From Schmidtea nova (taxonomy: Eukaryota), in contig CM097882.1 in NCBI GenBank assembly GCA_044892505.1, positions 442,742,001 through 442,806,000 on the forward strand: a stretch of 64,000 nt of DNA. The letters are read 5' to 3'. Positions 1 to 60,558 of the stretch are shown piece after piece; within the stretch, counting starts at the first letter, position 1; each line of letters starts with the position of its first letter. The position numbers and the translations under genes were made by a program. The notes under the pieces were generated by a model that did no database searches, was not told the DNA's origin, and worked only from the letters and a program-made list of their open reading frames with translations.

Positions 1-10
1 GTTTGAGCGC

Positions 11-520: not shown

Positions 521-575
521 ACAATGGGACAATCATTGCCTAATCTTAATTTAAACTTTAAATCTTCTTGTTGTA

Positions 576-4214: not shown

Positions 4215-4279
4215 GCTCAAACATCACTGGTTTGAACTCTTATAGTAAAAATGAACCAAATCACTATAGTAAAATTATC

Positions 4280-4662: not shown

Positions 4663-4694
4663 ACAATTTAATAAAAATAAAATTTAGTATAAAA

Positions 4695-33930: not shown

Positions 33931-34877
33931 TTATCTTTATTTGATTCACTGCAAAAAAATACAAACACAACACGCACATGTACGATCATGTCGTTCACTA
34001 AGTAAGTGTAATAAAAATAGATGGTACTTTTTGTACTGCTCTGATTGGCGTTGGTATGCTATTAGATAACGTTTATTCAAACATCGGGACGCAATAACAA
34101 CTGAAATCAAAAATACAAAATATGTTTCTGGAAATTGTGTTAGAACAAATAATTTGTGAAAAATTTAGTAAAAATATGTATTTATTGTTATTTTGGACCG
34201 TGTTATTTCAANNNNNNNNNNNNNNNNNNNNNNNNNNNNNNNNNNNNNNNNNNNNNNNNNNNNNNNNNNNNNNNNNNNNNNNNNNNNNNNNNNNNNNNNN
34301 NNNNNNNNNNNNNNNNNNNNNNNNNNNNNNNNNNNNNNNNNNNNNNNNNNNNNNNNNNNNNNNNNNNNNNNNNNNNNNNNNNNNNNNNNNNNNNNNNNNN
34401 NNNNNNNNNNNNNNNNNNNNTAGCGAGCTTTTAATCTTGAAAATATAATCTTAAATATTCTATTTTTAACCTATTCGTTTCCTCATTTTCGATAGATATT
34501 CAGGCCAATCCATTTAATTTTTCTTGATGCAATGGTTAACGCATATATTGAAATTTGCAGGATGTCAAAACAGATTTTAAACGGCTCAAAATTGGATTCG
34601 AAATTTCCAATACGCTCTTTTAATGCTGTAATAGCATAGTTGAAAAGAACATCAAATTTTTTTTAATAAAATTTCAATCGTGACTGTTTTTGCATTTTAT
34701 CATCAGATTTTCACGTGTTTCATTATTTTCGTCAAAAAATAGGGTTATTCTTGCTCTTCCAATAGATTCGCTTTCAAAATTGTCTGGAACTTCCACTTCT
34801 TTTGCTAAAATTTTTAATTATTGAATTATTGTTGCAATTTTTCAATATGAGTAGAGTCGCATTAAGACATGCAGCAG

Positions 34878-37758
34878 TAGAGTTTCTGGTTTCCCGACTT
34901 TTTTTAATTTTCGGGATTCGGGAATTCTCATTTTTGATAAAAATATATTTCTCGAGAATCGGGATGATTTTTAAAATTCCAGAGAATTATCGGGATATCC
35001 CGAATAAAAATCCTTTTTAAAAACTACACGAAATAAGATAAATTTGAACAAATAAATGGTATTTCGGTATTGCTTTTACTGAAAACAAAATTTATACATT
35101 AAATAATTCATTAAAAATAAATAAAAAAAATATTCATACATATATAACCATATTTTTTTTTATAAATACAATTTATTGAAAAAAAATGAAAATAAAAAAT
35201 AAAGGAAGCAATAATAACATTAAAAACTACTGTCCCAACTAAGACAATAAAGGAACTAACAATTTTAATAAAACAGATATATTATTTTTCATGTTTTTGA
35301 AAATAATTTTTCAAAAAACAAAGGCAATTTAAATGTTTATCTGTCAAACGTCCTCTTAGTTTGGATGCAAAGTTATTTGAAACAGAAAAGTTTCTCTCAT
35401 TTTCTGTTGAAATAGGTTTTATAGTCATAATTGCTTCCTTTAGTTTTTTAAAATTTTTGGTTATATTTCCAGTTGCTTCATAAATACTTATTTCTTTGGA
35501 AAGTAAACGATATTCGCCATCGCTCACAATTTTGCTTGGTGCCAGTGTTTTTGAAATAGATTCTTCCAATTGCTTGCTCATATTACATATTTTTATATTA
35601 GAATTATTATTATTTTCTTTAGTAATTGTAATACAATTTTCGTCATCATTTTCTATTACCATATCCACATCTTTATCAGTGTTTTTAAACAATCGTTTTA
35701 AAATCAATTTGGCTCTCTTCATTACTTCACTTTTAGAACTCAATTTAAAAAAATTATCCTCATCCTCATGTTGATCTTCAGGAATACAGAAAGTATTATG
35801 ATCCAGTAGAAATTTAAGCAGTGATACTAACGTAACGTCTCTCCTTTTTGATATTTGTGTTTTTATTTCTTTTAAAAGAGATGAACTTATTGCAGTATTG
35901 TTATTTTTAAGAGTTGTAAATAAAAATTTCAGTACACCTTCAGCAGATAATAAATTATTATCACGACGACTGAGTGCTTCAACAGATACTCTAGCTGGTT
36001 TCAAAGCATTTAATATATCATAAGCTAGCACTTCATCAATAGTAGGATTCCATAAATGCTCTGAATTTAAATCTTTTAAAACTTTCATTATTGGACTTTT
36101 AATTCTTAAAAACCTTTCAATCATTATTTCAATTGAATTCCATCGTGTCTTCACGTCTAATATACATTGTAATTCTTGTTTCTCTTTTTCTTTTACGTAA
36201 TTTTGCAGTAAAGCATTTCTTACAGGCGAGTTTTTAAACATTTTAACGATAGTTCCTATTTTTTTATAATAGTAAATTTTAAATTAAATTTAGTAGCTGC
36301 AGTTGATCTACTATCAGTATCACCAATACCATATTGCCAGTCATCTTCATCTCCTGATGAATCGGAGCAACCACTATCACTATTTTGGACACTAGAGCTA
36401 AAACCTTTTTGATAAAATGTTGACATAACAGCTAAATGCACTGCATGATTATAACATAATTGTTGATATGCTGGTGAAAGTTTACCGAATTTTATCATCA
36501 CACTCGCACCATCACTTGTAGTAGCAACTTTATCAGTTGAAAAATTTAAACCGAATGATTTCAAATTTAAATCAACCAATTCAATGGCTTTTTCGGCAGG
36601 ATCCATCTATACGAATTAAGCCCAAATTTTCAGATTCTCCGTCATGATAATATAATTGGATATTCATATATCTACTGTTTTTGAAACTTGTCCAATCATC
36701 GATTGACTGCGAGAATTTTTTATTATTGGATTTCATCAAATTTATTTTTCAATTATATCTAACTTTTTTTCATAATATTTATATATAAAACTGGATACAT
36801 AAAACTCGATGGCTTTTAAGGTATTTCTAATAAATTCGCTTTTTGTAATAGCATTAATTGAAAACCCGTCTTGGGCAGCAAGTTTTGAAACGACATATTC
36901 AATATTGTGTTTTTTGTTTACAGTAAAATATGTTTCTAATGCTTGTTTTTTATTTGATTCAAAATTCGGTTTTTTTGTTTCCTCCAATCTACGTTTCATC
37001 CGATGCTCCCCTCCACCCAAATGCCTATGTAATCCACTAGTTGACGACGCTTTGCATCCTATTGCTTTAATACAAAATTTACAAGTAGCTGTATCGCTAT
37101 TATCAGTTCTTTTGAAATAATTCCATATATTTTTACTTAAATATTCGTTTTCATTCTGTATAATCTAGAAGGTATTTAAAAATAAAGTACAAAATAGATT
37201 TTTTTAATATTTTAACAATACTAACTTCATTTCCATCCATATATAATTATTTCATTATGTTATAATAATTTTATATTGAAATGTATAGACTGGATCGATG
37301 ATTATATTTTTATAATATTTTAATCGAATTGAAATCAGTTTTTCAGCCACAATAATTTAATAATATTCTAGAAACAAATATAAATTCAATGTATACGAAA
37401 ATCAAAATGGAACACAAAATATATTACTTGCAAATAAATTGTAGTTTTTTCTGAAATTAGCACAATGACAATTAACAACTTACAATTTTTTGTTATATAT
37501 TACTTTTTCCCAGCTGAAATTTAAGTTTGACAGAAAGTCAAATAAAATGCGACTCGAAAATCCAAAAGTTAAGTTGAATTATTTCCAAACAATTTTTACA
37601 GCGGTTGCTTAAATTTCGATTTTTGAATACGAAATATATTTCTTTCCCGAGAAAAATAATATTTCCCGAAATATAGTTTAAAAAAAATCTCGGGAAAAGG
37701 GAAAAACAAATAAATTAGTTTTCTCGAAAATTCCCGAGAGAGAATTCTTGAGACTGCA
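34878..37758 (-). mobile_element. Decayed hAT transposon with BED-finger transposase (about 35282-37150, frameshifted)
   Basis: BED finger IWNYF..ATCKFC..STSGLHRHL; also LCYNHAVHLAV, LDVKTRWNS and ISTENERNFS. Imperfect ends with TTCCCG/CGGGAA subterminal repeats; no TSD, so the boundaries are approximate. Confidence 0.8.
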
Positions 37759-37903
37759 CTTACATTGGAGGAAACTGATTGTAATTGTTTATTCCTTATA
37801 TTAATTTCAGTAAGTACTTCGTGTTAAATTACAATTCCACAAAAATATTCAAAAGAGCTCAATTTTGTAGCGATTGATTGAGCAGATATTTTAGTTAGTT
37901 AGG

Positions 37904-38715
37904 TGTTTGTGATGTTTAGCCGGTGCTCTTAGTCTGACTCCTCGGTGTTCTTTAAATTTGATTCAAGGAAATAACCCAACACAGAAGAAGTTATTTGCAA
38001 CTATCACAATTTTTTAACACACCAAGTCTGTTCAAAATTTTACAATAACTTTTATGGACTGCTTCTCCGACTTCGCGTAGGGATAAGTCCCCCAAACGAA
38101 GATCTTCCTTTCTGGTACGCTTGAAGAATGAATTTGGCTTTGAACTTTTTAATTATCGCTCTTAACTCTTTACGGATTCTCTCGTTCTGACTTCACTTAC
38201 TTTTTGCTTCGGCCATTCTGGCAAAATTTAATGTTTCTCTTTCCCTTTTATACTGCGTCTGTTGATGGGTTTCCCACTCCGCTGCAGCTGTCTAATGGTA
38301 GTTTCCGATTTGACATTTTAATTTTCTATCTGTCGGTTACGCTCTCCGGGTCTCCTCTAAAGTTAATTTTCTCAGGAATTATTACCTGTCATATTGCTTG
38401 TCCGGGTTTCCCACACTCTTCGGGTTCTCCATTGTCTCGTGTTTTCCATTAGCTCGGGCTTTCCATTAGCCAATTTACTCTTAATTAATATTTTAATAAT
38501 TTCTTGCTGGGTATCCCCCATTCACTTTATTTTATTATTTTTGGATTCGTTCCAATATTCGGCATCCACCCATTCCAATTTCCCCCGCTAATTCTTTGTT
38601 TTCGAATTTTTCCTAAATTTTAATTAATTTTGAAAATTTTATACTTTATTGATTTTTACTAAGTTTTTATGATTTTTTGTTTTTGTATTTTACTAATTTT
38701 TACTAAACCCCAACA
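37904..38715 (-). repeat. LTR of the TGTTGGGG family, reverse orientation
   Basis: Reverse complement starts TGTTGGGGTTTAG and ends ATCACAAACA, and shares internal blocks with 12597-13359. Confidence 0.7.
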
Positions 38716-39381
38716 CCTTGTTCAACTATTTGGAGTGATGAGTGGTGTGCTTACTCCAACCTTTGTAATTTGGGATAGACACATTACACAGTCAATCACT
38801 CAGAAAACTTTTTATGTCCCTTAAAAAGTGTTGTGTAGTTGTGTAGTTGTGCAAAAAAGAATGAGGCACATGCATGGCACCTTTGCATCATTATTCTCTA
38901 GTTATTTGAAAGAGTGACTGTGACACAAGATATCCTAAATTGAAATTTCAACACATTCTGTTACACATTTCCGAGCAGTATGAGTTGTCTTGATAAAAAT
39001 AAATGTCAATTGGATATTTTTTCTTAAAATATAAAAAAGGAGGGGTTGTAAGGATTGCCCAGATCCAATCAATTGGTTAATTTCATTTATATATTTTTCT
39101 CAAATAGTGCTTAAAATTTTGATTCTCAATTGTTTTTAAAATATATTTTTTTCACATATGAATTATATTTTTTCGAAGAGTTCTACAATTTTCAAAAAAT
39201 GTCCATTTTTTGTGTTGGTTTCGTGTGGTGAAATATTACGAGTAACATGGTCTAGGTTTCGATGATTATCAAACTAAACTCAAGAAAATTATCAATTCCC
39301 CATGCGTGTACCCGTAATTATTTTAGATAATTACGTTGGTAATGTGTACCATGGTTCTTTGAAGTTATTGAACAGAAGAGC

Positions 39382-41352
39382 CGGAGCGGGACATTTCAGT
39401 CTCGCCGTTTCAGTCCTGGTCAAATCAGTCCCGTCTGCTTCAATCCCAACCAATGCAAATAAATTACTTCAAATAACATTTAATGACATAAAAAACAGTC
39501 AGAGGTTATACATGTTGATAAAAACTCTCAAAGACATCTACATAAAAACTCTCAAAGTATTAGCATAAAAAATCAATGCAAATAGATAACTTTTAATAAC
39601 ATTTAATTACATAATAACATTTAATGACATAATATGACATATATGTTGATAAAAACTCTCAAATACATCTAGATGAAAACTTTCAAAGTTATTGCATAAT
39701 GAAATTGTGCGCCAATCCTCGAAGATACTCTACGATGTCACGTTTGTTGTAGGTGGACACTAAGTTGTAAATTCTATCATCAGCTTGTATGTACTTGCGT
39801 CTCTTTGCCGGTGCTGGAGTGCCTGCCACATACGCCTCGTAGACGACATCTCGCCCCTTCTGGACGCATCGTAGCCCATCAATAAAGCGCCAAATTGAGG
39901 GATGAGAAATGTCGAGCTCCGTCTGAAGTCTTCGATGTGCAGCCTCCGCGTGAATGTTTGTGCGGTCCTGGTTATTTAGAACGCGATCATAGACATTCCA
40001 CAATGGGGGCGGAAAGGAAGGAGCACGTCGTATGCGATTGCGTCCAAAGCGTCTACCAAGGTAACTATCTTCGAGCCAATTGAGGATGGGCTGTAGTTCA
40101 TCATGAAGTTCTTCTGTGAGTGTATCGAAAGCGACATCTAGGTTGACGATGGGAACGAATGCGATAGCAATGATCATCCGGGCCTGCAGTGAAAACATCG
40201 TATCATTATCGTAACAATTAAGCAAACCTGCAGCACGTAAATGTACTCTAAAGTTCTTCATTAAGTGGAACAGGCATCCTCGGAGAACAGCTGAAGGGAA
40301 ATTAGCACGGACTGCGTTTTTAACAGCCATTTCTAAGTCAAGTGAGATGAACGACGGATTGAATTGAGGCCAGAGTTCTTTAATGATTCTGAACAACCTA
40401 TCGTATGTAACTTGCTGCTTGTTCCCAAGGAGGGCATACAGCACAGGGAAGACATATCTACCACATTTAGCCAACACCACGAAGACCTGCTCAAAGAGTG
40501 GTGGAGCTAAACTGAACGTGCCGTCTATGAACACTTCATCCATCTGCTGACTCCAGCGTATATGGCTTTCACGTCCAAATAGAATTATTCGGTTAACATC
40601 ATCCTGTTCTGTGTTACCTAGTACAAAGCGTTCCTGCTCTCCTGGAACTGACTCGTACATTCGATATTCATCGGGAATTATTAGTTGGGTTAAGTTTGTT
40701 GGATTTGCTGGAGCCATGGCCAATCGATTTCTGATCCTTTGAATAACCTTCCTGTTTGCATCTTTATTTGGCATCTGACCCATCGTTGCTAGATCGATGC
40801 CCTGGATGACATGGTTTATGATTTGTGCAGGTTGTTCTATTGTTTCATCGGCTCGCCTCTTTATCGATGTTTTAACTTTAACCACCTCAACTCGAGCAGC
40901 ATTGCTTCCGTGACTGTGACTCCCACTTCTATTGACTATGGCATCGTTAAAATCAGTGTGAATCCGGGCTTTGCATTGTCCCTGATTATCGCATCTCCAG
41001 AACTTCCTTTCTCCGTTTGCGCTCATTTTGCAGAAACTGAAAGGATGCCCTTCATCTGCCAACTTTTTACGTCCTCGTTGAGACTTCAAATCATCAGTCA
41101 TGACGGTTAGTTTAGTTAAAATTTAACGTTTTGCGAATTAATAAATGTCCTAATTCCTAATATTTACTAATACTAATGTTTTTGTTTACATTTGTCTAAG
41201 CGTGTTTTCGTTTTCTTTTCGTCACAATGTTTCATCCAAAATTATGCCTTAGGACTTAGGACTTAAACGGTCAGTATTGAAACAGTCGAGACTGATTTGA
41301 CGAGGACTAAATCGGCGGGACTAAAACGGCGGGACTGAATAGTCACGGACCG
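39382..41352 (-). mobile_element. Complete Mutator-like (MULE) transposon, 1971 bp
   Basis: Imperfect TIRs CGGAGCGGGAC.. / ..GTCACGGACCG with TCAGTCCCG-type repeats, and a perfect 9-bp TSD CAGAAGAGC (39373-39381 and 41353-41361). Confidence 0.93.
39689..41101 (-). CDS. FLYWCH-MULE DDE transposase, intact, 470 aa
   Basis: FLYWCH (FWRCD..CKARIHT..HSH), FIDGTF (D), SLDLE (D), CLFH, RTNIHAE (E). Confidence 0.92.
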   Translation of the reverse strand: MTDDLKSQRGRKKLADEGHPFSFCKMSANGERKFWRCDNQGQCKARIHTDFNDAIVNRSGSHSHGSNAARVEVVKVKTSIKRRADETIEQPAQIINHVIQGIDLATMGQMPNKDANRKVIQRIRNRLAMAPANPTNLTQLIIPDEYRMYESVPGEQERFVLGNTEQDDVNRIILFGRESHIRWSQQMDEVFIDGTFSLAPPLFEQVFVVLAKCGRYVFPVLYALLGNKQQVTYDRLFRIIKELWPQFNPSFISLDLEMAVKNAVRANFPSAVLRGCLFHLMKNFRVHLRAAGLLNCYDNDTMFSLQARMIIAIAFVPIVNLDVAFDTLTEELHDELQPILNWLEDSYLGRRFGRNRIRRAPSFPPPLWNVYDRVLNNQDRTNIHAEAAHRRLQTELDISHPSIWRFIDGLRCVQKGRDVVYEAYVAGTPAPAKRRKYIQADDRIYNLVSTYNKRDIVEYLRGLAHNFIMQ

Positions 41353-43266
41353 CAGAAGAGCTGTGCGGCCACGACTACTCTTCTCTAAATTCTATTTAAT
41401 GGTTTCTCTCGTGTCGATAGAAGACACTTAATGTTCTGACCATACGTCTTACTGGTCACAAATTTCGACGATTTAGTAGCTGTTTTACTTTAAAATAATT
41501 CAGATAAAAATTACGAAACTTGAGTATCTAAACACTAAAGTTGACAAAATATTTGCTTCGGCTCTGTATAAATATTTTATTCAAACTAAAAAAAACTCGA
41601 AAAATTATAATTCTGAGTAATTCATAAAATATTTCTGAATGCTAAAATTTTGTGGAACCTTTATAATATTAACACGGAGCTATAGGGCTCCGTTGAGCAC
41701 ACATTGAAAATCATTGGCCTAAATAATCGAATCGATTTGTTAATGAAATTGGTTCAGCATCGATGTCATTTGTCTTGCAATATTCATTTTTGGAATTTTG
41801 TTGAACTTTGTTGAAATTATCATCGATGTTTTCTTCGTGTTAAAAATTAACTACATTCAGCGCTTGGAAGTAATATTTTGTCGACTGGAGCAAACTTTTT
41901 AAAAAGGCACCTTTTATGGTCAAGAAGTTTAAAAACACACATTTTAAAGGGATAATATATATTATATATATTTTCAATTTATTTATAATTATGTACATAA
42001 AATAAAATTTTAATTTTGGACCTTAATTTCCGCAAAATCGTTTATTAAAGCGTTATAAAAGACTCAACAATGGTGCCTTCAATGGAAATCAATGATAAAC
42101 TCATTAATATTCCTTGTCCCATTGATGATCTTAAATAATTTTTAATTATTTTCAATATAAAAAAACTGTATTCCACAGAAGCTACCAATACAGGTAAAGT
42201 TAGAAAAATCTTTTAAAAAATGCCTAAATTTGGAATTATTGTAATTATATTGTTCTTGCCTAAATAATTAAAAATTTATATTGGATACATTTTAGATGAG
42301 AATAAGGAAGTAAAATTTATTATTTTTTCACAAATTTCAATACCATCAGTTAATATTAACTTGAAATCCTTACAATATTATAATATTTACAATTTATCTT
42401 TATATTTTAAATATTATATATAAATTCGTAATATTTAGTATGTTTTCCATTTGTTCAAATCTTCGTTGATTGATGTAATAGTAGTGTCAAAAATGAAATT
42501 AAAAATATTATTTTATAGTTATAGTGCGGATCTAAAATGGGATAATCTGCAGATTTGTATTTAAATTGTCTATTTTTAAGACTTATTCCAACAGTTTGAA
42601 TATCTTGAAAATGTCCTTCAATTTACATAGTTTCAGCTATTCTTTTTGATTCATCAACGTACTGTTGTTGGTTTCGGATTGGGTTAAAACAAAAATAGTA
42701 AATTAAACTAATAATTATTTTTAAACGCTCTAGGGATTCCTCCATCCAAAACCTCACATAAAATGCTTACCTATCACACGAGCACCCTCGATCATTTCCC
42801 TGTAATAATCGAGTTGGAAATGTGCAAGGTGTTTGAACAATGATGGGCAGGTGAGCTCTATTGCTAAAACTACTCCCCATTTATGTTCACGGGTTCGTCT
42901 CGCTGCCGATAGAAGGACTTACGCTTTAACTTTAATCTATCCGCATCCATTATCTTTCCTCTCCATGTTTCTTTAGCCCCCTTCTTTACAATATATTTCA
43001 ACTTTCAACTTCTCTTTCAGCCCCCTTCTTTACAATATCAACAAATAATCCTTAATCAATTACAATTTATTATCTCTTTAATGTTTCTATTGTTTATTAG
43101 ATTTATGTTAATCTTATTGTTAATTCTAATGTATAGTTAATTTATTCTATATTTTCCTTTAAATTATTTTAAATTTTCAATAAATCACATTATTTTCTAT
43201 ACTCTACCATAAAATAAATACAAACAAAAATTATTTAATAAGCAAAATAACTAAATCACAGAAGTT

Positions 43267-43857
43267 CTATTCAAAGTATTTGGTAATGTCTTCATCCGAT
43301 ATTGCAAAGTTCATTGTTAGATCAATCTCGGGAATTTCTTTTGATTGTTGAGCCAATTGCTGGAGCACTTGCTTCTTCCAGCGACGCTGACGTGCGCCCA
43401 TCTTACTCTTCTTTTTCTTCTTGACTTCTGGATTGGTCGTGTTCTTTGGTATACTGGCTGCTATTGTTGCTTGAACCTGAGAGGTTTCCTCGGTGTTCGT
43501 TCCCTTCGTGCATCCTGCTTTCTCGTCAGCCCAATGCTGATAAGTGATTGGTCGAATGAGCTGACTGAGCTCTTGAGTTAAATACGACGCCGTTACAGAT
43601 TTCAGACATTTCTTTAATTCCATCTTCGTCGCGTCCAATTCCATTTGGATCTCTTCGTTTGCTCGCTGTGAGCGTTGATTTTTTACAATTTGGGTTTTCA
43701 TCTGCTCTGGACTGAACCAGCTTTTCTTCAGGTTGGAGATTATGCCATCGGCTTCTTTTATTTTTTCCGATTTCCGTAACATTTCTTTGTCCAGGCTGCG
43801 AATTATCCTCCATGCTTTATCTAATTCGGCTTGATTAGTTGCTGTGTTGGCTGACAT
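43267..43857 (-). CDS. Orphan coiled-coil protein with a basic NLS-like tract, 196 aa
   Basis: ATG-started ORF that is less AT-rich than its flanks, with heptad-like N-terminal half and KKKKKSKMGARQRRWKK. No family recognised. Confidence 0.55.
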   Translation of the reverse strand: MSANTATNQAELDKAWRIIRSLDKEMLRKSEKIKEADGIISNLKKSWFSPEQMKTQIVKNQRSQRANEEIQMELDATKMELKKCLKSVTASYLTQELSQLIRPITYQHWADEKAGCTKGTNTEETSQVQATIAASIPKNTTNPEVKKKKKSKMGARQRRWKKQVLQQLAQQSKEIPEIDLTMNFAISDEDITKYFE

Positions 43858-43985
43858 GTTCTAAAATTCAAAATGGTTTATTAACATGAAATTGGCAGTC
43901 TTGATTTGAACGATTCTCATACTTTTGACAATCATTAATTGCGAATTCAGGAAGAGAAAATGATTTACCTATTACACTTTCAACA

Positions 43986-44123
43986 CTGTCGCTATGTACA
44001 GCGATCAGATACATTTATTTCATAATGCATTTTATTTAGTTACGCCTGTGCTATATACAGCAATCAGGATAAGAAAATTATAAGAATAAACTAAGGTCCA
44101 CTGCCCTATGTACAGGGTTCAGG
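43986..44123. repeat. Three spaced hairpins with loop AT(G/A)TAC
   Basis: Stems TCGCT/AGCGA, TGCT/AGCA and CCCT/AGGG, each inside an outer CTG/CAG pair. Confidence 0.75.
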
Positions 44124-44584
44124 ATAAGCAATTATATTTAATTATTTATGTGGAATGTTTGAACCTATAGCCTATTGCTGCTATGTTACTTGCGTAGTAG
44201 ATCACTACGTTATTAGAGTTATCGATTTTTATGTTGTTATTAAAATTATACTTTGTACAAATTCTTAACCGTGTATCTGCCGCTCTATGCCCACAAACCC
44301 CAGATGTGACAATCGAAAAATATACGCTAACACTCTGTGAATCTCAAGGTAAAATCAGGTTAATAAAATCGCAATTATATCCGTCTCAAACTAAAATCAA
44401 AACTCAACTTAACTATAAACTCAAAAATTTTAAATCGATTATAAAATAAAACTTCAACTGGCTATACTATCCAGTGAAAAATAAGGTTAGAAATCAAAAA
44501 TAAAATTCCTACCCTCGTCACGGCGCTTTACACCGGTCGGACGGCCTAACTGTACGGAGCAGTCGTTTCTACTCGGCACAGTAT

Positions 44585-44873
44585 GCCTCCATTTCACCGA
44601 TTGCACGGTGATCGGAGCCCCTTAAATCATACGTAATTTTCTACTATAACTACGGTATATAAATAATATATATTCGCCTCCTTCCACTGATTTCACAGTG
44701 GAAGAAGCTCGACTCAAAAATTTATTCATAAAAATATACTTCAACCTAATTGTTAATATCACAACATAATGTTGCCTCCTTCCACCGATTACACGATGGA
44801 AGAAGCTCAATAAAAGATATATAATAGATATATAAAGTCGTCTCCTACCATTGATTGCACAGTGGAAGAAGCT
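44585..44873. repeat. Four spaced 34-nt hairpin repeats (CCTCCTTCCAC(C/T)G-ATT(G/T/A)CA-C(A/G)GTGGAAGAAGCT type)
   Basis: Copies at 44585, 44676, 44774 and 44840, separated by unrelated AT-rich spacers. Confidence 0.75.
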
Positions 44874-47800
44874 TGATTTAATTCTATATTCAAAAGAATG
44901 CAACATATTCAGAAAAGGTTTATTAATTTCATAATTACAATTATAATGGCTAATGACAGAATTTCATCATAAAATTACAAAAAATAAAAATATAATAAAC
45001 AATAACCCATACCTTTGGTTTTCTCACTGAGTCAAAAGTGATATCAAAATTGAATACTTTCAACACTTAAGTAAAAAATCATTAAAACATCTGAATCTGG
45101 ATCAGTATTTATACTGACCAGATCAGTTCATTGACCAATCAGCATCAATCTGATGGTCCTCAATGCAATTCTATTAAAAATAAAATCAATTTTATTAACA
45201 AATATGATTTTCATTTTCTTGTTTTAATTTACCGATTTTTTATTAATTCTTCTTCTTTTTTACTTATTTATTTCGCTTTCTTATTATTTAAATATAATTA
45301 AATATCATTTTTCTTTAACACTTTTACATTTTCCATTTACTTTCTTCCAATTTTTGATATTAAATTAATATTCTTTATTACATTTTAATTCGTTTTTTCT
45401 GAAATTCTGGTAATTATTTTAATTTTAATTTATTCTTATTTATTTCTTATTATTCCTATTATTTATGTTACATGTGGACTAAATGGTGGATCCAACAGTA
45501 CAATAAATTTTCATTTGATCAATAACCACTTAAAAAATATAAAACTTCTTTTGCATGCTAAAATCTATTACATGTAAATTCAATATTATTATTTGCATAA
45601 TTCAATTATTGTTTCTTAAATCATTTTTAAAATTTGCACAAAAAATCACGGTGTATAAGGTGTAATAACCAAATTTTTTGTTTTTCTGTGCGCCTAATAG
45701 CCCGAAAAATACAGTACTATTTTTCTACTGACCTTCAATTGGTCCATTTAAACAACGAATATTTTTTTAATTTGTTAAAATTAATTTCTATATTCTTTTG
45801 GTTATTTTATAAATTTGTACAAATAATTTTTATTATTTTTAATTCATTTCCTAATCGTTTTAATAAAAATATAGATAATATAATTGAAATATTTTCTCAT
45901 TAATTCTATTTTAAATTGTAATATTATATTAAAACCTACTTTTTAAGTTAATTCTAAATGATATGCTTAATTTTATTTTATGCTTTTCGAATTACTTGGT
46001 TATTTCTCTATTGTTTCAATGATAATAAAAGGCTAATTACATCGTTACACAGCAAACATAATCTATACTTTCATCAATCATTCAGAGAATATGGATGATT
46101 TTTTTTCGTTTTAAACTACACTTTAAATAACTAGATGAATCTTCTGTATTATTTTTTACATATTTTAATTATACACTCTTAAAAGGAATATCATGATTCT
46201 ACTAAATATTGTTTTATAAAATGCAAATACCCAAATATCTATTTTGTTAATAACACTGGTGATCTTTGGCACTGAATATTAAATTATAAGGTTTATTTCA
46301 CGAATAAGATTATAATTCTTAACATACGAATACGGATGAAGTACTAATATTAAAGATTAGGTTTCATTGTTATCCTATTTTTCTTTTTACAATCGCAATA
46401 AGGAAAAAGTAATGCATAGAAGTTTGATATTTACAATTCTAATTTATATTCTTATTGATTTTTATAATAAAAAGAGTTATACGATTCTTACACTATTTTG
46501 TCTTGATCGAATGTAAAAATTAAGTTAAATGTATTCTGAAACTAATTAGCACAAATCGCATATAAAATATATCAAAAGACTGCAATCACATTATTCACTG
46601 GCCTACAATAGTTGTCTATTACTACAGATCAAGGCCTAGTAGCAGTAAAGCTAAATATCGATTTCTCTTATTTATGATGACGGTGTCACGCTTAGCTGAA
46701 CTGATAAGTTTATTCAATTTGGTGGGTTGTTAGTAAAAAACACATTTTTTACATTTTTTACTAGAGTCCTAGTAGACAGGTGAGTCTTTTTGCCACGACT
46801 TTGTTTCGGCTGCAGTCAGATAGAAATTTTCTATCTTACTGCGTAGATTTCTTGTTATCTATCTGAGTGTGTGTTAGATGGTTATTTCTTTACTTTTTCT
46901 AGCGTCTGTGTGCGCTCTTTTCTTATTCGTAGTTTCGTGTCTGCGTGCAAGCTTTATTGTGGTTTTTATGAAAAGAATTGTAGTTTAGTTTTTTTTGGAG
47001 GTAATTATAAGTTTGTTTAATAGAATTAATTGTTTATTGTATGTTAATAAATTAAAAATCATATTTTGATTAAATTGAATTTGAAACGAAATTGTGAAAT
47101 TTTTAATTATTTCAAATTGTTTATTCGAATCAATTTGGTTTTAATTTTATTTTGGAAAATTTTATTTTCATTAAATTATATGTGATTTTTCTTGATTTGA
47201 ATTAAATTTGAATGATTTTTTAAACTGTATACAAGAAGAATTTAGATATTGAAATAAAGTTATTATTAAATTAATATCTTAGTCTTATTTTTCTGAATGC
47301 TCAAATTGTTGAACAGACTGAGTTCAATTGAGTTTTTGTATAAATATTGCAGTAACGTAGCACGTAAGAACGCGCACGAAGTGAACTTAAATTGAAAAAT
47401 AAGAAATGCCAAATGAACAGAATTAATCAAAGAACCCCTAACATTTTATTAAAGACGTTTACAAGTTAAACTGAAACCTAATAGCACGAAAAAAACACAA
47501 CTATTACATAAAAACATTTAATTACAGCAATTAACTGCAAATGAGAAAAATTTCGAACATTCAATTAATAAATTATTTAATTTTTATAAAATTTTTATAG
47601 TCCTGGATTCTAGCTGTTTCCCTTATACATACACGTCAAAAATGTCCCTCATAATAGACTTAATGTCTCAGATTGCACCGCAGAAAATGACGAGTCTACT
47701 TGAAATGACCTTTAAATTTGATCTCAAAATAAGATATGATTGTGTAATCACTTTCGATATAGGAAAAACGGTCATTATACAAATCAGTTTATGCTACGTG

Positions 47801-50087
47801 AAACTCGGTAATTACTCAATATATACAATGGATGCCCGGTGATGAATTTGCAATGTTGGAATCTGACAAAATATATTTTGCATTGACATTTTGTGGATTT
47901 CGCTTTGGACCAATTTTTCATAATCTGTTATACCAAATTCACAAACCGTAACTGTAGAATTCTATCTCTTATTATATCTTCAGCTTTGATAACACGGCTT
48001 GTTGCGTCGAGAATATTATTATTACATGTGACCGTCACTGAAAATTTTCGTACTTACCCATTTTGAATGCAACCATTCTTTTTTGAAGTATTCAGAAAAC
48101 CAAAATAACAGCAACTGATAACAGATTTTTTAATAAAAGAAAGTCAACAACATAGGATGTTAAAAGAGAACGAGAGTCTTACTTGGATTCAAACTCATTT
48201 TGCTCATTTCTAGCTCACTTTGCTTTCAATTTTTCCGTTAATAATAACTGTGAACACTATTATCAAGTAGCGATGAAGAGGTATTAAATAAGATTTTTTT
48301 TTGAATTTGAAAATTTCTCGTGAATAGAAATTTGTGTGTAACTTTTTATTCTAGGCTCTATCTTTTACACCATCCCACCTGAACATTTACATGACTTTCC
48401 TCGCGCGTAAACCCGTAATAATTCTCGGGTGATTGCGTTGAAAATGCATATCGCAGGTCGACCATCAATAGGCAGGTGAACCCAGTCACCAAGACTACTC
48501 CCCATGGAACTTTTCATTTGGGGTTCATATTGGTTGATAGAAGACCTGCTTTTTCCTGTAATTACACATTTGCCAACAGCACTCTTTACTTTTCTGGTAA
48601 ATTATGGTTTCTTCCTGAACTTTGATATGTATCCATTACTCAGCTTCGCCAATTTCAGGGATGAGATAAAAATTTCTTATAAAAAAATTTCAGATCCATA
48701 AAAAACAATTGATCTAACACAAAAGGCAAATTATACATGCACTTTGACATTAATTATAAAACAATGATTTCATTAGGAACTTCGAGTTCAGACAGCCCAT
48801 ATAGATAACCTACTTGGTTTGCTGGTAGACTTAAACTTTTCTTCTCGTTGCTTTCGTCACTGTTTGGGACTAGGTCTTAAGTAGTTAGATGTGAGCCCGC
48901 AGGAACAAAGACAATACGAGACAACAAAAGCTGAGTCATAACACGAGTCATACTCTTTGAAAACAAAGGCAATGAGTTATTGCATATTTTGTTAGACCAC
49001 TCCTTCATGGTCAAAATGACCGCCAAACAGACAAAGCCTTAAAAATCTTTTCTCTTTGTGCTACATCACAGAAATTTATATGTATCCATGCAAAATAAAG
49101 AGGAACAAAATAATATACTGGTAATTTCTGTATAACTTATCATTTTCATTCTATTCACAAGCTAAGTTGATGAAATGATAAATAATTGAACCAACCAAGG
49201 TATTTAATTCAAAAACAAGGTTTTCTTCTTAATATATTTATTTACAATATACATTATATTTTTCTCTAATAAAAACATTACAAATTTGACAAAATGAACT
49301 TTGCCACATATTCTACAGCGAATAATATGTCTGCAAGGAAGATATAACATTTCAATCTTTGTTGATTGATATCTGCAACATGTAAACATTATAATTTGCC
49401 GCCTTGATATTTCTTCAACTTTTTTTTATTAATATTTGCACAATTTTGCAATGAAAATTTAAAATTTCCTAGTCTAGTGAATTATATAATTTCCATATAT
49501 CCGTTAATAACTCATCTTCATTCAATATTTTGTCAGTTATATAAGCAATAATTCATCATTTCCCTTTTGAACCCACATTTCTTAATGAATCCCTTCTTTA
49601 CTTAAGCGACAGAATAAATTGTTAAAATTGGATTTGTTCAATTTTTCAAAGTTTTCCATTACAAATATAATACATTTAAAGAACTAATTTCAGTGGAATA
49701 TTGTTTAAATAAATTATTTGAATTCCTAATCAATGCCAAAGGTATATTGCTAATTTTATCATCGGTATCATTATTGATTTCATGAACTGGTGCAGCATTC
49801 GAAGTAGTAAAAGATGAGATACTGGTTCACAGTCATCATTACCAGATTTATTAAGCTGTTCGAATTGTACAGGGTCATGTTCGGATTCATCATCACATTG
49901 AGAAAGTTCATTGATGATAGACTCTAAGTCTTCGGTTAAATGTTAAAATTCATCAAGTAAATATTTTATTATACAACCTATCAAAAATTAAATATTAAAT
50001 TACAGTATAAATATTTTACTTTTATTAAATGCCATTTTTCACAAATAAAATACGTTTTTTAATTGTTAATAGTAAAATATTATAAAA

Positions 50088-55734: not shown

Positions 55735-56070
55735 TTCAGTGTCTAGGGCGCTAATTATGAGTACCGACATAAATTAATTTCCTCGATCGTATACCCATGA
55801 GTTCCCTAGACTCGACTCATGTTGGTGATGCATACGTCGTCGTAGATCGAATTGGTAGGTGAACGGTTCTGAGAACAACTACTTCTGATTTATAACTACT
55901 GTGGGTTCACTGACCGATAGGTCGCTCCTCTCTTTACTACTTCGTAGGTCACTCAATAAAGGTTTAAGTATTTGTTATCTATGTCGGACAACGAAAACAT
56001 AAATTAACAGCTCAAAACATTTATTAACACTACAGATCTCTTATTTCGTTAATCAACTCCAGTTCGGAAA
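55735..56070. repeat. Dispersed repeat, homologous to 59475-59810
   Basis: Shared blocks GTGTCTAGGG, ATGAGTTCC(C)TAGAC, GACTCATGTTGGTGATG, CTCTCTTTACTAC, TAGGTCACTCA, TATCTATGTCGGA(A)CAACGAAAACAT. Confidence 0.75.
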
Positions 56071-57689
56071 GGCCAGGGCCCCTTTGGATTTGCTCGGCCT
56101 TATGTAGTTGGCTCCGCATTTGTTCGGGCGAGAAGTAGTTTTGCATCATCTCATCTATTTCCATTTGTTGTCGCGCTATTCTTCATTTAATTCATCAAAT
56201 TCTCGGCTTCTCGCACTTAATCAGCTCGGCCCTTTGGATGCTTAATCGGGTTTCATGTTCTATGCTAAAACAACATTTGAATATTTTATGCTAATGATAT
56301 ATCCAAGTTTGTTAATAACAATTTTTATGAATTTTCTAAATTACTAAATTATCACACCCTGGAGCGATAACACATGAGTTTATTTATCTATTTTTTCATC
56401 TGAAAAGGTATTTAAGTTAACTCACAAAACAAATAAATCAAAAATTAATACAATAACTGAGGATACTACGTACACATTTATTATGGTAAGAAACACAAAA
56501 TCATAGTCCATTAATGCTCAAAATTTTCCATGACATGCTACATTTCTAATCGATGCTCAGGATAGACCTGAAGTAGAATACATCTTGAATTTATATTGTG
56601 GATCTCCACGAAGGAAGCTTTGGTATTGCCTCATTTCTTTGAACTTCTCTCTGAACTCTGGAGCAGTATGGGTGAGGTGGGACCAGTCCGTCAAATTCCC
56701 ATTTGGGGATATACCTTGCATAGATAATCTTCCGTGGATGGCCTTTCTCATCTTTAAGCACCACAAACCAGGTTGCGTAAATTTCTAAAGATTCCTGGTC
56801 TATCGTAACAGGCCAATTGGGGCCTCCTCTGTACCATATCTCTTTTGAGGATTTGTGGCCCAAGTCACGAATGGGCATTTCTTTCGGAACTGTGCCATTT
56901 ACGCATAGTTGCATTTACTGCACTGAGAATTGGAGTTATTTATATGGTATATAAATTTTTTATTTATATGGTCTTATAAAATTTGGTATATAAATTTATG
57001 AATAATTTGTTTTTTATTATATAGGGTAGATTGTTGTTTAAGAAAATTCTAGAGCCTAGCCGAGTCTCCTGCAAAAAAGGTATCGGGATAGCTGGAGTGC
57101 GTGTTGTATATGTGGGTGAATGTTTGGTGTATTTGGTCTAACAACGTATTAAAACCTAACAAAATAAAATATCAAATATTAATTTCAATATATATCTTTC
57201 TAGTAACCAAACGAATGCAAAAAATAATTACCACAATCACTGGGGATGGGTATAATGAACTAACTATAGCGAATTAGAATTTTATATTCGAAACTCTATT
57301 TATTTGTTATTTATTTTTAAATTGACTCTTCTCTTTAGATTTTTTCTTTAGTTCAAAATGATTGATTCTTTCCTTTAGATATTTTCTTTAGTTCAAAATT
57401 GTTTTTCCCAAATAGTTCCCTTAGTTTTAATTTGTCAAGATTTTCTATTGTTTTCTTAATTTGTCCAGGTTTTCTTTTATAATTAATTTGTCAAAGTTTA
57501 CTTTAGTTTTTTTAATTGTCATGGTTTTATCTCGTTATTAATCTGTTATAACTAACGTGCCAAAATAAAAATGATAAAAAATGGGAGGTTACCAGTGTCC
57601 GACATGACTCTTATGATAATGATAATAATAATAAAAATAATAATAGTAACAACAATATTAAAAATACAGCTTTAACACTGAGGATCTGT

Positions 57690-58560: not shown

Positions 58561-59474
58561 TGAATATAATGAAGTATTATACATGAACTGTATAATTGAT
58601 TTATTTATTTAATTTTTGTGATTAGTTATCACTACATTTTCTTTTATACATTAAAACAAGAAAAAACGAAAACATATAAAATACAGTAACTACAAGAGTT
58701 AGTTACAGGAAGAACTCACCACTGTCTTTGTATGCATGGTCATGCCTCGCTCTTTCGTAGTTAATAATTTATTGACTTTCCGAGTACATGGGTTCTGGAG
58801 ATTTTGAAAATTTAATATTTTTAAAATGACATGGCAGTATTTGACCCATCGATTTAATAATGGTCCTGTTATTAATTCATCCTTTTACCGACTGGTTGTT
58901 GTTAATTTATGCCGGATGTTTGTGTTATGATAGAATTTCGCTTTATTTTAGATAGTCAAACAAACTTTGATTAAACTGGTAATACATGCAATGATATCCA
59001 GTATTAGGCCTCGCGCATTGTGGTATAGTGTTCGTTTCGCTGTTGATAGCATTATATGATGGATTTATTATATACCTTCGTTAATTGAGGGGAACTATGT
59101 CACGTTTAACATGTAATTAATCAATAGAGTTTCTAACATGAACTACCACTATACTTGGAGTATTCAACAAAAAATGTATGTGGAGTTACCTATTAAATCT
59201 TTGGAAAGTATTCCTTGTATGAAATGATCAAGGTTGGATATTCTTTTCGGTGTAAACGTTCCCTATCGAAAATTCATCTTTAGAGTGAAATATCTCCGTA
59301 TTAGCATTATTCTAATATGAAACATCATCCCAAGGGTAACTGGATCGAAAATGGTTCATCAATCACACAAAAATAAACTAATTGAACTACTTGTGGTGTA
59401 AAAAGATTTCATATTATGAATTTTTTTATATGCATTTGTTGGTATTCGGTATTGTTGGTTGAAAATCTTTGATC

Positions 59475-59810
59475 GGTGTCTAGGGTCATTGTTGTGAATA
59501 CTTACATAAAATGTATTCCCTTGATCCTATACCTATGAGTTCCTAGACATGACTCATGTTGGTGATGTATACCTCTTAGATCAAATCGACAGATGAGTGG
59601 TTCTGGGAACGATTAATCCCGATTTATACCTATTGCGGGTTCTCTGGCCGATAGGAGGTCCCTACTCTCTTTACTACCTTATAGGTCACTCATTGAGATC
59701 TATATACTCTATATCTATGTCGGAACAACGAAAACATTAATTTACGGTTCGAAAAATTTATTTACATTACAGGGTAATAATCTCGTTAATCGATCTTACT
59801 TCGGAGAGGT
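59475..59810. repeat. Second copy of the 55735-56070 repeat
   Basis: Same shared blocks as the 55735-56070 copy. Confidence 0.75.
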
Positions 59811-59860: not shown

Positions 59861-60558
59861 TGTTGGTGACGTAGTGCACCAATAATATTCTTTCCAAACC
59901 GATGGGGGTCCACAGAAAATAATTAAAAAATTAAAATGTTAATTAAGAATTAATTGGCTAATGGAATGCCCGAACTAACGTAAAACCCGAGCCAATGGAT
60001 AACCCGAGTGATGAGGAAAACCCGAGGTGACAAGTTAATTGCCTTGAAAATTAATGTTCCAGACAGAAAGCAAATGGCAATTAGCATCTTAATTGCCTCA
60101 GAATGTAAATTGGAATTTCGAGATTAAAAAAATTGACGGTTTAGTGGTCTTTACCGGGAAATTTACCATTTTAACGTAAGGAAACAAATAAATCAACTCT
60201 CAAAATTTTATATAAAAAGAGAGGCGAAATCAGCAGAAACGCCAATACAGTTGAAGAAAAGAAAAGTATCGCTATCGAAATAAATAAAGGAATCGTGAAA
60301 AGTAAAAGATAAAAGAAGTCTGTCATAATCAAATTTAAATCCATTTGTTAGCACGCGCACCAGAAAGGGACATCTGCCGTTGGGAGACATATCCCTGCGC
60401 GTTTGCGAAAAGTCTGAAAAGCAGTTAAATAATTTGTAAAGACAATTGTGTATTAGATTGATTATTAATAAAGGTTATTGTATAGGGTCTTGTTAATTGA
60501 TTTTAATAAGAACACTGGAGTCAGATAAAGACCCACTTAACCAAATAAATACCCAACA
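59861..60558 (+). repeat. LTR of the TGTTGG..CCCAACA family
   Basis: Starts TGTTGGTG and ends ACCCAACA; has AACCCGAG repeats and AATAAAGG. Confidence 0.65.

What the first reader, a model, noticed from the sequence alone, without database searches (positions are those of the whole stretch)
43267..44900. Orphan ORF with a long, structured upstream leader: candidate new element
On the minus strand the order is four hairpins of type A, a GC-rich core, three hairpins of type B, then an ATG-started 196-aa coiled-coil/basic ORF, then two AAAGAAGGGGGCT direct repeats (42975-43035). No transposase, RT, TIR or TSD explains it. It could be a satellite or non-autonomous element in which a small nucleic-acid-binding protein recognises its own hairpin arrays.
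Basis: inference. Interest (0 to 1): 0.8.

Follow-up and report, generated by a model that had tools for sequence, protein, structure and literature searches.

The report
Orphan repeat-element gene with hairpin leader
A 196-codon gene with no relatives anywhere, preceded by an unusually dense cluster of RNA hairpins, is the one intact copy of a small repeated element in a flatworm-like genome; it is probably a new helper-dependent mobile element, but its class and the hairpins' job are unproven.

Summary
On the minus strand, 45165 to 42647 carries in order: two 5' palindromes, four type-A hairpins, a GC-rich three-hairpin core, three type-B hairpins, an intact 196-aa ORF, and two direct repeats. 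Five of the eight most stable 41-nt hairpins in the whole 64-kb window lie here.

The ORF is real-looking: none of 1000 shuffles gave an ORF this long, and the model is a confident helical hairpin plus a basic helix. It is a true orphan, with 0 hits among 1.84 billion representatives and none in Pfam or PDB. Its codon usage matches the young transposons in the window, not the host-like genes.

New here:
Three end at the same 3' motif.
- One other copy keeps a significant piece of the ORF.

So this is a repeat family, and the finding is its only intact copy. No RT, transposase, TIR, LTR or TSD was found, and the neighbouring MULE is independent. The hairpin arrays were found only in this copy.

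Best reading (0.35): an RT-less, single-ORF retroposon-like element with cis RNA hairpins. A lineage-specific gene cluster remains a serious rival.

The parts
42647..45165 (-). Whole unit, copy 1: 5' palindromes, hairpin leader, ORF, 3' module
   Evidence: GC-elevated block between very AT-rich flanks. The 5' limit is set by the first palindrome. The 3' limit is set by the terminal motif shared with copies 2 and 4.
45129..45165 (-). 5' palindrome 1, containing an ATTGG (inverted CCAAT-type) box
   Evidence: z -3.9 for the pair of palindromes; sequence
45091..45126 (-). 5' palindrome 2, with TATAAATA in its loop; candidate promoter
   Evidence: (fifth most stable hairpin of the window)
44840..44872 (-). 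Hairpin A1 (decayed)
44774..44806 (-). Hairpin A2
   Evidence: (z -4.9)
44676..44708 (-). Hairpin A3
   Evidence: (z -7.0)
44500..44625 (-). GC-rich core: hairpin A4 (44585-44619), a second hairpin (44549-44582) and a third (44511-44545), followed by a U-rich run
   Evidence: -49.3 kcal/mol, z -3.6; the plus strand reaches only -35.3, z -1.2
44101..44122 (-). Hairpin B1, holding a UGUANAUA 8-mer
44046..44067 (-). Hairpin B2, holding a UGUANAUA 8-mer
43987..44008 (-). Hairpin B3, holding a UGUANAUA 8-mer
43267..43857 (-). ORF196: helical hairpin (residues 4-100), disordered linker (101-150), basic helix (155-174), acidic tail
42972..43038 (-). Two 23-nt direct repeats (period 44 nt) holding AAAGAAGGGGGCT: a local duplication of the GTAAAGA motif found once in each of the other three copies
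   Evidence: compared by eye
42647..42936 (-). R1, the conserved non-coding 3' module of copy 1, ending in ...ACCAACAA
55704..56072 (-). R2, the 3' module of copy 2
   Evidence: z 7.5 against R1; 75% identical to R4 over 379 nt
56054..56158 (-). Copy 2: remnant of the ORF, a broken gene. Only about 35 codons align significantly (ORF196 residues 40-74).
   Evidence: 30.4 bits; 300 shuffled queries reached at most 25.4
48290..48562 (-). R3, the 3' module of copy 3; no significant ORF remnant
   Evidence: (z 16 against R1)
59436..59809 (-). R4, the 3' module of copy 4; similarity to copy 2 begins abruptly at its 5' edge

Best explanation
The finding is the only intact, apparently full-length copy in this window (about 2.5 kb, 45165 to 42647, minus strand) of an unclassified interspersed repeat family in a flatworm-like genome.

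I think it most likely works as an RT-less, single-ORF retroposon-like element. The proposed steps, all inferred, are:
- It is transcribed from its own 5' end, where a CCAAT-type box and a TATA-containing palindrome lie.
- Its one protein is a small coiled-coil, basic, nucleic-acid-binding protein of the ORF1/Gag type.
- The sense-strand hairpin arrays in the leader are cis-acting RNA signals, that is, protein-binding sites for assembling or regulating the transcript.
- The conserved 3' module R is the part needed in cis for copying, which would have to be done by an enzyme supplied in trans.

What is shown:
- the hairpins and their exceptional density;
- better folding of the sense strand;
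- the intact orphan ORF;
- transposon-like codon usage;
- the four-copy family, with a common 3' end in three copies and unequal 5' extents;
- linkage of ORF and R in two copies.

What is inferred: the RNA intermediate, dependence on a partner element, any protein-hairpin binding, and the promoter.
For: Family:
- R1 matches R3 at 61% over 252 nt (E 4e-7).
- Local-alignment z scores are 16 (R1-R3) and 7.5 (R1-R2 and R2-R3).
- R2 matches R4 at 75% over 379 nt (E 4e-64).
- Copies 1, 2 and 4 all stop at ...CCGAA[A/T]ACCAACAA, after which similarity is lost.
- Copy 4 begins abruptly inside the 3' part.

ORF-R linkage: a match to ORF196 residues 40-74 lies directly upstream of R2 on the same strand. 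It scores 30.4 bits; 300 shuffled queries gave mean 20.1 and maximum 25.4.

Among copies the non-coding 3' module is better kept than the ORF. That fits a cis-required end and is not what neutral pseudogene decay would give.

Composition:
- ORF GC3 is 47%, against 28% and 25% for host-like ORFs and 44% for the intact MULE.
- The synonymous-codon log ratio is +0.11, like the MULE and the Ty3-like pol and unlike host-like ORFs at -0.08 to -0.11.

ORF reality:
- 0 of 1000 shuffles of the unit gave an ORF of 196 aa or more.
- AF2 places pLDDT above 90 on two long helices.

Hairpins:
- 5 of the top 8 in the window lie here.
- Minus-strand RNA folds better than plus-strand: the four A hairpins sum to -68.1 against -47.6 kcal/mol, and the core gives -49.3 against -35.3.
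- Stems are kept while spacers are AT-rich and unconserved.

The 17 upstream ATGs in the leader rule out simple cap-dependent scanning through an unspliced leader.
Against: - No RT, endonuclease, transposase, LTR or TIR is in or near the unit.
- No target-site duplication or clear poly(A) tail was found.
- All four copies lie in one orientation within 17 kb, which also fits a local gene cluster.
- DNA similarity between copies outside R is not significant, so the 5' extent of the family unit is unknown.
- The hairpin arrays are seen only in copy 1.
- No partner element with the same 3' end is present in the window.
- The protein has no detectable similarity to any ORF1 or Gag.
- Hairpin covariation is not significant with so few copies.
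- Copy number in the source genome could not be measured: no eukaryote genome collection was on hand, and the species seems absent from the protein collections (best match of the window's transporter gene is 80%).
Confidence: 0.35

Rival explanations
1. A lineage-restricted host gene in a small tandem cluster: one working copy and three decayed ones. It would be transcribed from a CCAAT/TATA promoter near 45100. The interval from 45011 (GT) to 43861 (AG), which holds the hairpins, would be removed as a 5' intron or as an outron by trans-splicing. The hairpins would then be intronic or regulatory RNA or DNA elements of that gene.
For: - All four copies share one orientation within 17 kb.
- The 5' end is promoter-like.
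- A strong donor-like site at 45012 and a U-rich acceptor-like site 3 nt before the ATG are present.
- The 17 upstream ATGs make an unspliced leader untranslatable by scanning.
- No TSD or tail was found.
- Flatworms trans-splice many mRNAs (PMC12582326).
- Small helical-hairpin proteins evolve fast, so an orphan status is not surprising.
Against: - Codon usage is unlike the host-like ORFs of the window: GC3 47% against 25-28%, and the log ratio falls on the transposon side.
- Among copies the non-coding 3' module is better conserved than the coding part.
- Three copies end at exactly the same 3' motif.
- No homologue exists in any other species among 1.84 billion representatives.
Confidence: 0.3
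2. Two unrelated things lie side by side. The ORF plus R is a repeat-family member. The hairpin arrays are a separate local feature upstream of this copy only: a minisatellite of palindromic units, an insertion of another small element, or a structured non-coding RNA gene.
For: - Covariance-model searches find A and B hairpins nowhere else in the window, including upstream of copy 2, which keeps part of the ORF.
- No significant similarity exists between the leader of copy 1 and the sequence upstream of copies 2 and 3.
- The core is followed by a U-rich run and a further stem-loop, as small RNA genes often are.
Against: - The hairpins fold better in the sense of the ORF.
- They fill the space between a promoter-like 5' end and the ATG without any visible insertion boundary.
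- Copies 2-4 are too decayed or truncated for their lack of arrays to mean much.
- Rfam has no match for a small RNA gene.
- The flatworm Sm-like motif described in PMC12582326 is not present.
Confidence: 0.2
3. The palindromes act as double-stranded DNA, not RNA. They would be repeated imperfect palindromes serving as binding sites for a dimeric protein, that is, an enhancer or an origin-like region of the kind known as 'homologous regions' in large insect DNA viruses.
For: - Units of about 70 nt carry a central imperfect palindrome of about 33 nt.
- One mismatch in A1 would be a wobble pair only on the plus strand.
- Virus-like Maverick/Polinton genes are in the same window.
Against: - 12-bp arms are long for half-sites.
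- Positions vary while staying complementary.
- G-U pairs favour one strand by about 20 kcal/mol over the four A hairpins and 14 kcal/mol in the core.
- No viral gene lies adjacent; the Maverick genes are about 20-40 kb away.
- The resemblance is recalled from my own knowledge and was not tested.
Confidence: 0.05

Closest known systems
HAL1 ('half-L1') elements of mammals: LINE-1 derivatives that keep ORF1 only (PMC4859970, citing Bao and Jurka 2010)
   Same: Both have a single ORF for a small coiled-coil nucleic-acid-binding protein and no polymerase. Both form multi-copy families with a shared 3' part, and both presumably depend on a partner.
   Different: HAL1's ORF1 is recognisably L1 ORF1; ORF196 matches nothing. 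No partner element, poly(A) tail or TSD was seen here. HAL1 has no hairpin arrays.
Drosophila HeT-A: a non-LTR retrotransposon with a gag region but no pol region (PMC2173066)
   Same: Both are RT-less elements with one Gag-type ORF and long non-coding parts that carry cis signals and promoter activity.
   Different: HeT-A Gag has zinc knuckles and targets telomeres. It is about 6 kb long and forms head-to-tail arrays at chromosome ends. There is no sequence or domain similarity to ORF196.
Mouse L1 5' UTR monomers: tandemly repeated promoter units upstream of ORF1 (my own knowledge, not tested here)
   Same: Both have tandem repeats in the leader directly upstream of a coiled-coil ORF.
   Different: The mouse units are about 200 bp and act as DNA promoter modules. 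Here the conserved parts are 22-33-nt hairpins separated by unconserved AT-rich spacers.
Small basic regulatory or coat proteins that bind stem-loops in their own RNA (retroviral export factors with their response elements; phage coat protein and operator hairpin). Analogy from my own knowledge.
   Same: An oligomerising helical part plus a Lys/Arg-rich helix sits next to repeated hairpins with a constant loop on the same transcript strand.
   Different: There is no homology, no evidence of binding, and no viral context. The arrays lie upstream of the ORF and may be spliced out.
Repeat-A of Xist and the stem-loop repeats of roX RNAs: tandem conserved hairpins separated by U-rich spacers (my own knowledge)
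   Same: GC-rich short hairpins are repeated 4 times or more, separated by AU-rich unconserved spacers, with the stems conserved.
   Different: Those are long non-coding RNAs of dosage compensation. There is no sequence similarity and no Rfam match.
Clusters of Pumilio response elements (UGUANAUA; PMC5758885, PMC9418443)
   Same: Each B unit carries a perfect 8-mer on the ORF strand only: three within 115 nt, against 17 on the whole minus strand of the 64-kb window.
   Different: Known functional sites lie mostly in 3' UTRs and are bound single-stranded. Here they lie upstream of the ORF and inside predicted stems. The three are copies of one duplicated unit, so they count as one event.

Membership tests
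Autonomous non-LTR retrotransposon (LINE) | Reverse transcriptase (and endonuclease) ORF | tested here: not met
   No RT or endonuclease domain is in ORF196. All stop-free stretches of 45 aa or more in 36600-39394, 41327-43266 and 44900-48500 were listed and read by eye only, not scanned against any family library; none looked like RT or endonuclease.
Non-LTR retroposed family in general | Copies share a fixed 3' end and differ in how far they extend 5' | tested here: met
   Copies 1, 2 and 4 end at the same motif. Their extents are about 2.5 kb, at least 0.45 kb, and 0.37 kb. With four old copies this is suggestive, not proof.
Non-LTR retroposed family in general | Target-site duplications and an A-rich or microsatellite tail | tested here: not met
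   No shared word of 10 nt or more lies between the flanks of copy 1, and none between the flanks of copy 4. A-runs near the ends sit at unequal distances. The copies are 60-75% alike, so old duplications could be erased.
ORF1-only derivative (HAL1 / HeT-A type) | The ORF is homologous to the ORF1 or Gag of a partner element, and the 3' end is shared with that partner | tested here: not met
   The homology half was tested and failed: no relative of ORF196 was found anywhere. The shared-3'-end half could not be tested, because no partner with the R end is in the window and the source genome is not searchable with these tools.
ORF1/Gag-type protein | Coiled coil plus a nucleic-acid-binding part (RRM/CTD or zinc knuckles) | tested here: inconclusive
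   The model shows a confident helical hairpin and a Lys/Arg-rich helix. There is no RRM, CTD or zinc knuckle and no fold match.
MULE / Pack-MULE | The unit lies between the element's terminal inverted repeats, and the same cargo is present in related copies | tested here: not met
   The MULE's TIRs are at 39394-39451 and 41269-41326, about 1.3 kb from the unit's 3' end at 42647 and 1.9 kb from the ORF. A related copy (82% nt identity) in L011 has no ORF196 or hairpins beside it.
LTR retrotransposon, LARD or TRIM | A pair of long terminal direct repeats, with a primer-binding site and a polypurine tract | tested here: not met
   No LTR pair is in the window. R1 and R3 are direct repeats but only 61% alike, and R occurs four times. 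The purine run in AAAGAAGGGGGCT looks like a polypurine tract, but it is part of R. No primer-binding site was searched for, since no LTR pair defined where one should lie.
Helitron | Rep/helicase gene, or ends of the TC...CTRR type with a hairpin just before the 3' end | tested here: not met
   There is no Rep/helicase. The 3' region is not unusually structured (z -0.5). The hairpins lie at the 5' side.
Known RNA families, including self-cleaving ribozymes, snRNAs, snoRNAs and miRNAs | A match to an Rfam covariance model | tested here: not met
   Nothing approaches a gathering score. The best match is snoR30, at 21 bits against a cutoff of 60. Stems of 12-15 bp are also too short for miRNA precursors.
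Flatworm spliced-leader RNA gene | A hairpin holding a splice donor, a hairpin before an Sm-like motif ending UVUUUGG, a hairpin after it, and usually tandem gene copies (PMC12582326) | tested here: not met
   The U-rich run after the core does not end in that motif. There is only one core, and no Rfam snRNA match.
Pumilio response element cluster | UGUANAUA sites in a 3' UTR, bound by a PUF protein | tested here: inconclusive
   The motif is present three times on the ORF strand only. The position is upstream of the ORF rather than in a 3' UTR. Binding cannot be tested here.

The most novel reading that the evidence does not exclude
A previously undescribed kind of helper-dependent element. 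Its small coiled-coil, basic protein would recognise two families of hairpins arrayed in its own leader RNA, making a self-marking ribonucleoprotein comparable in logic to export-factor/response-element or coat-protein/operator pairs. The B hairpins would in addition present or hide Pumilio-type sites. Neither the protein nor the RNA modules have relatives in any current database.
Probability: 0.1. Interest if true: 0.7.

Novelty: new variant of a known kind. Interest (0 to 1): 0.4.

Why it matters
If the best reading holds, this is a new family of polymerase-less, single-gene mobile elements in a flatworm-like genome. Repeats in such genomes are still largely unclassified.

The element's leader is built from conserved RNA hairpins rather than from promoter repeats. 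That would give a compact natural case for asking how a dependent element marks its own RNA.

It would also add a protein with no relatives among about 15 billion predicted proteins, clustered to 1.84 billion representatives.

If instead it is a host gene cluster, it is an ordinary lineage-restricted gene with an unusual structured 5' intron or outron. The practical value is then limited to annotation.

Tried and rejected
Protein searches, all empty:
- Pfam gave only sub-threshold noise: PC-Esterase 18 bits and XRCC4_CC 15 bits, both against a cutoff of 27.
- The word search, the exact contig look-up, the full HMMER search of 1.84 billion representatives, PDB sequences, Foldseek against PDB (best E 4) and viral contigs found nothing.

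DNA searches elsewhere:
- The hairpin-A pattern and two core patterns had no match in viral contigs.
- Nine single matches in metagenomes share no flanking similarity and are chance.

RNA families: three Rfam scans found nothing, and there are no tRNAs.

Ideas rejected:
- Part of the neighbouring MULE: own TIRs, and a related copy without the unit.
- LTR element: no LTR pair.
- Spliced-leader or snRNA gene in the GC core.
- miRNA cluster: stems too short.
- R as a coding exon: an ATG-led frame is present in R1 and R3 only, not in R2 or R4.
- R as a conserved RNA structure: consensus energy only -2.6 kcal/mol.

By-eye resemblances that failed shuffle tests (z about 0) and are not used: between copies 1 and 2 around the ATG, and in the 3' UTR.

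The bacterial promoter/terminator scan is irrelevant to a eukaryote and gave background counts.

The organism could not be named. The window's transporter ORF is 80% identical to an unnamed UniParc entry and 43% to a Schmidtea protein, so the host is 'flatworm-like' by inference only.

No repaired, consensus or joined sequence of the element was built.


Full report
SETTING

The window is AT-rich (21-39% GC in 2-kb steps) and eukaryotic, and it is crowded with transposon remains:
- Maverick/Polinton-type genes at both ends, a Ty3-like pol, and an intronless MFS transporter gene;
- a FLYWCH+MULE transposase;
- hAT and pogo-like pieces, so named by eye from the translations; no family scan hit supports them.

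The transporter's best named full-length relative is a Schmidtea protein at 43% identity. An unnamed UniParc entry is 80% identical. I therefore take the host to be a flatworm-like animal whose own genome is not in the protein collections. This matters: 'no relatives' below means none in other organisms, and it says nothing about copy number in the source genome. The 1707 N in the window were left alone.

THE OBSERVATION

- **Type-A hairpins.** The four have 12-bp stems and a 6-nt loop reading UGNAAU. The full pattern occurs three times against zero expected. A covariance model finds exactly these four and nothing else in 64 kb. As RNA, three of the four are far more stable than shuffles (z -4.2 to -7.0); the first is decayed.
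- **GC-rich core.** The fourth A hairpin is the first of three hairpins that make up the core (44500-44625; -49.3 kcal/mol, z -3.6).
- **Type-B hairpins.** The three are short, with 5 inner pairs plus 3-4 outer pairs. Each is weak alone, but as a pattern they are non-random: 3 matches against 0.15 expected, and the model finds only these three.
- **Further 5' palindromes.** Two more lie at 45129-45165 and 45091-45126 (z -3.9). The second has TATAAATA in its loop and the first holds an inverted CCAAT-type box.
- **Density.** In a scan of every 41-nt window of the whole sequence on both strands, five of the eight most stable hairpins lie between 44544 and 45127 on the minus strand. The cluster is real and exceptional.

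RNA OR DNA, AND WHICH STRAND

The stems contain G-U pairs when read in the sense of the ORF. On the other strand these become A-C mismatches.
- The four A hairpins sum to -68.1 kcal/mol on the minus strand and -47.6 on the plus strand.
- The core gives -49.3 (z -3.6) on the minus strand and -35.3 (z -1.2) on the plus strand.
- The B hairpins fold equally well on both strands.

Within each family two base pairs changed on both sides and stayed paired. With three or four copies the shuffle controls reach these values often (101/500 and 48/500). I call this consistent with selection on pairing, not proof of it. Templated repair within DNA palindromes could give the same picture.

Spacers between the hairpins are AT-rich and unconserved.

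Each B unit also carries a perfect UGUANAUA 8-mer on the ORF strand only. This is the Pumilio response element of the literature. The three are copies of one duplicated unit and lie upstream of the ORF, so I treat this as a lead.

THE ORF

- **It looks real.** An ATG-started frame of 196 codons did not arise in 1000 shuffles of the unit (longest 141). It arose in 5 of 1000 random sequences with the ORF's own composition.
- **Predicted fold.** The single-sequence model gives two long helices (residues 4-45 and 50-100, pLDDT mostly above 90), a disordered stretch (101-150), a Lys/Arg-rich helix (155-174) and a short acidic end.
- **No relatives.** Nothing was found in Pfam, the word search, the 1.84 billion representatives read by HMMER without a length filter, PDB sequences, PDB folds or viral contigs.
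- **Foreign composition.** GC3 is 47%, against 28% and 25% for the transporter and another host-like ORF. The intact MULE has 44% and the Ty3-like pol 38%. A synonymous-codon log ratio puts the ORF with the young transposons (+0.11) and not with host-like ORFs (-0.08 to -0.11).

THE LEADER CANNOT SIMPLY BE SCANNED

Between the promoter-like 5' end and the ATG lie 17 upstream ATGs. Several routes are possible:
- the interval from a good donor-like site (45012) to a U-rich acceptor-like site 3 nt before the ATG is removed, by cis- or trans-splicing;
- transcription starts closer to the ORF;
- translation is internal.
No data here can tell which applies.

THE NEW RESULT: A REPEAT FAMILY

Following this up gave four copies of the module, all on the minus strand.
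- R1-R3 has z 16; R1-R2 and R2-R3 each have z 7.5 against shuffles.
- R2 (56072-55704) and R4 (59809-59436) are 75% identical over 379 nt (E 4e-64).
- Copies 1, 2 and 4 end at the same short motif, after which similarity stops.
- Copy 4's similarity to copy 2 begins abruptly.
In copy 1 it has been duplicated locally.

Directly upstream of R2, on the same strand, a short open frame matches ORF196 residues 40-74 at 37% identity, including nine of eleven residues around FSPEQM. It scores 30.4 bits, whereas 300 shuffled versions of the protein reached at most 25.4 against the same window. The ORF and R therefore travel together in two copies and form one unit.

State of the ORF in the other copies:
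- In copy 2 the gene is broken. Only about 35 codons align. More than 100 codons of ORF196 have no counterpart, which means at least one large deletion or replacement. The rest cannot be aligned well enough to count stops or frameshifts.
- Copies 3 and 4 keep no significant trace of the ORF.
- Outside R, DNA similarity between copies is not significant. By-eye likenesses around the ATG failed the shuffle test, and I do not use them.

WHAT THE UNIT IS NOT

- **Not cargo of the neighbouring MULE.** That element has its own terminal inverted repeats at 39394-39451 and 41269-41326. Its relatives are 1.5-2.5-kb single-gene elements. An 82%-identical, internally deleted copy on a metagenome contig has neither the ORF nor the hairpins nearby.
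- **Not an LTR element or Helitron.** There is no LTR pair, and no RT or endonuclease domain in the ORF. The stop-free flank stretches were read by eye only and none looked like RT or endonuclease. No Helitron features were found, and no TSD.
- **Not a known RNA family.** Rfam has nothing for the hairpins, the core or R. That includes ribozymes, snRNAs and snoRNAs.
- **Not a spliced-leader RNA gene.** The features described for flatworms are not met.

INTERPRETATION

Several findings fit a mobile family whose 3' end is needed in cis:
- a shared 3' end;
- copies of very different 5' extent;
- a non-coding 3' module that is better kept than the coding part;
- transposon-like codon usage;
- an A-rich sense strand.

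The closest known kinds are the polymerase-less, single-ORF non-LTR derivatives: HAL1 and HeT-A. On that reading ORF196 would be an ORF1/Gag-type RNA-binding protein, and the sense-strand hairpins would be cis signals in the leader. This is my best explanation at 0.35, and only its anatomy is shown.

Against it:
- no polymerase-bearing partner, tail or target duplication was seen;
- all four copies point the same way within 17 kb;
- the hairpin arrays occur only in copy 1.

A lineage-specific host gene cluster with a structured 5' intron or outron (0.3) and a chance juxtaposition of arrays and element (0.2) remain open.

VERDICT

The decisive data are a copy census in the source genome, transcripts, and comparison with sister species. 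None of these could be obtained with the collections on hand.

Several short motifs were recalled from memory during reasoning. One of them, the Pumilio 8-mer, was used in a script before it was confirmed in the literature.

Noticed in passing
window 18549-18756: A tandem array of about 14 copies of a 13-nt unit whose core is the palindromic heptamer TGAGTCA. From my own knowledge this is the classical AP-1-type site. Two further 101-nt repeats follow at 18819-19039.
   Followed up: no
window 39394-41326: An apparently intact FLYWCH+MULE transposon: a 470-aa ORF at 39689-41101(-) and TIRs of about 58 nt. Its closest relatives (46-63% identity) are scattered over mites, a firefly, a wasp, Trichuris, Meloidogyne and many unnamed short contigs. 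This patchy spread suggests horizontal movement.
   Followed up: partly
L011 9995-11362: An internally deleted copy (about 1.4 kb) of the same MULE family, 82% identical in DNA, on an ENA metagenome contig of an unknown eukaryote.
   Followed up: partly
window 35282-37164 (-): A decayed hAT-type transposase in pieces. It has a BED-finger-like stretch and a C-terminal dimerisation-like stretch, and GC3 of only 18%. The hAT identification is by eye only; Pfam gave no hit for the 319-aa piece.
   Followed up: no
window 1-5081 and 63286-63897: Maverick/Polinton-like genes at both ends of the window: a chromodomain piece, a double-jelly-roll-like capsid, and type-B DNA polymerase. A 1315-aa ORF at 6715-10662 has no family, only a sub-threshold Endonuclease VII hit.
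   Followed up: no
window 26100-29292 (-): The pol region of a Ty3-like LTR retroelement (RT and RNase H), with further ORFs upstream. No LTR pair is in the window.
   Followed up: no
window 59905-60026, 38403-38497, 12771-12896: Another short repeat family (74-83% identity, one copy inverted). One copy lies about 100 nt upstream of copy 4 of the R module and may have truncated it.
   Followed up: no
window 56591-56914 (-): A 107-aa ORF with no Pfam family, about 335 nt upstream of copy 2's ORF remnant. It has no counterpart in copy 1.
   Followed up: partly
window 21754-23244 (-): An intronless 496-aa monocarboxylate-transporter-like (MFS) gene with host-like AT-rich codon usage. It was used to infer a flatworm-like host.
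   Followed up: partly
window 30959-31354 and 60757-61456 (-): Fragments that look like pogo/Tigger-type DDE transposases, judged by eye from the translations.
   Followed up: no
window 34200-34420 and elsewhere: Runs of N, 1707 in all. They were left as they are and not filled.
   Followed up: no
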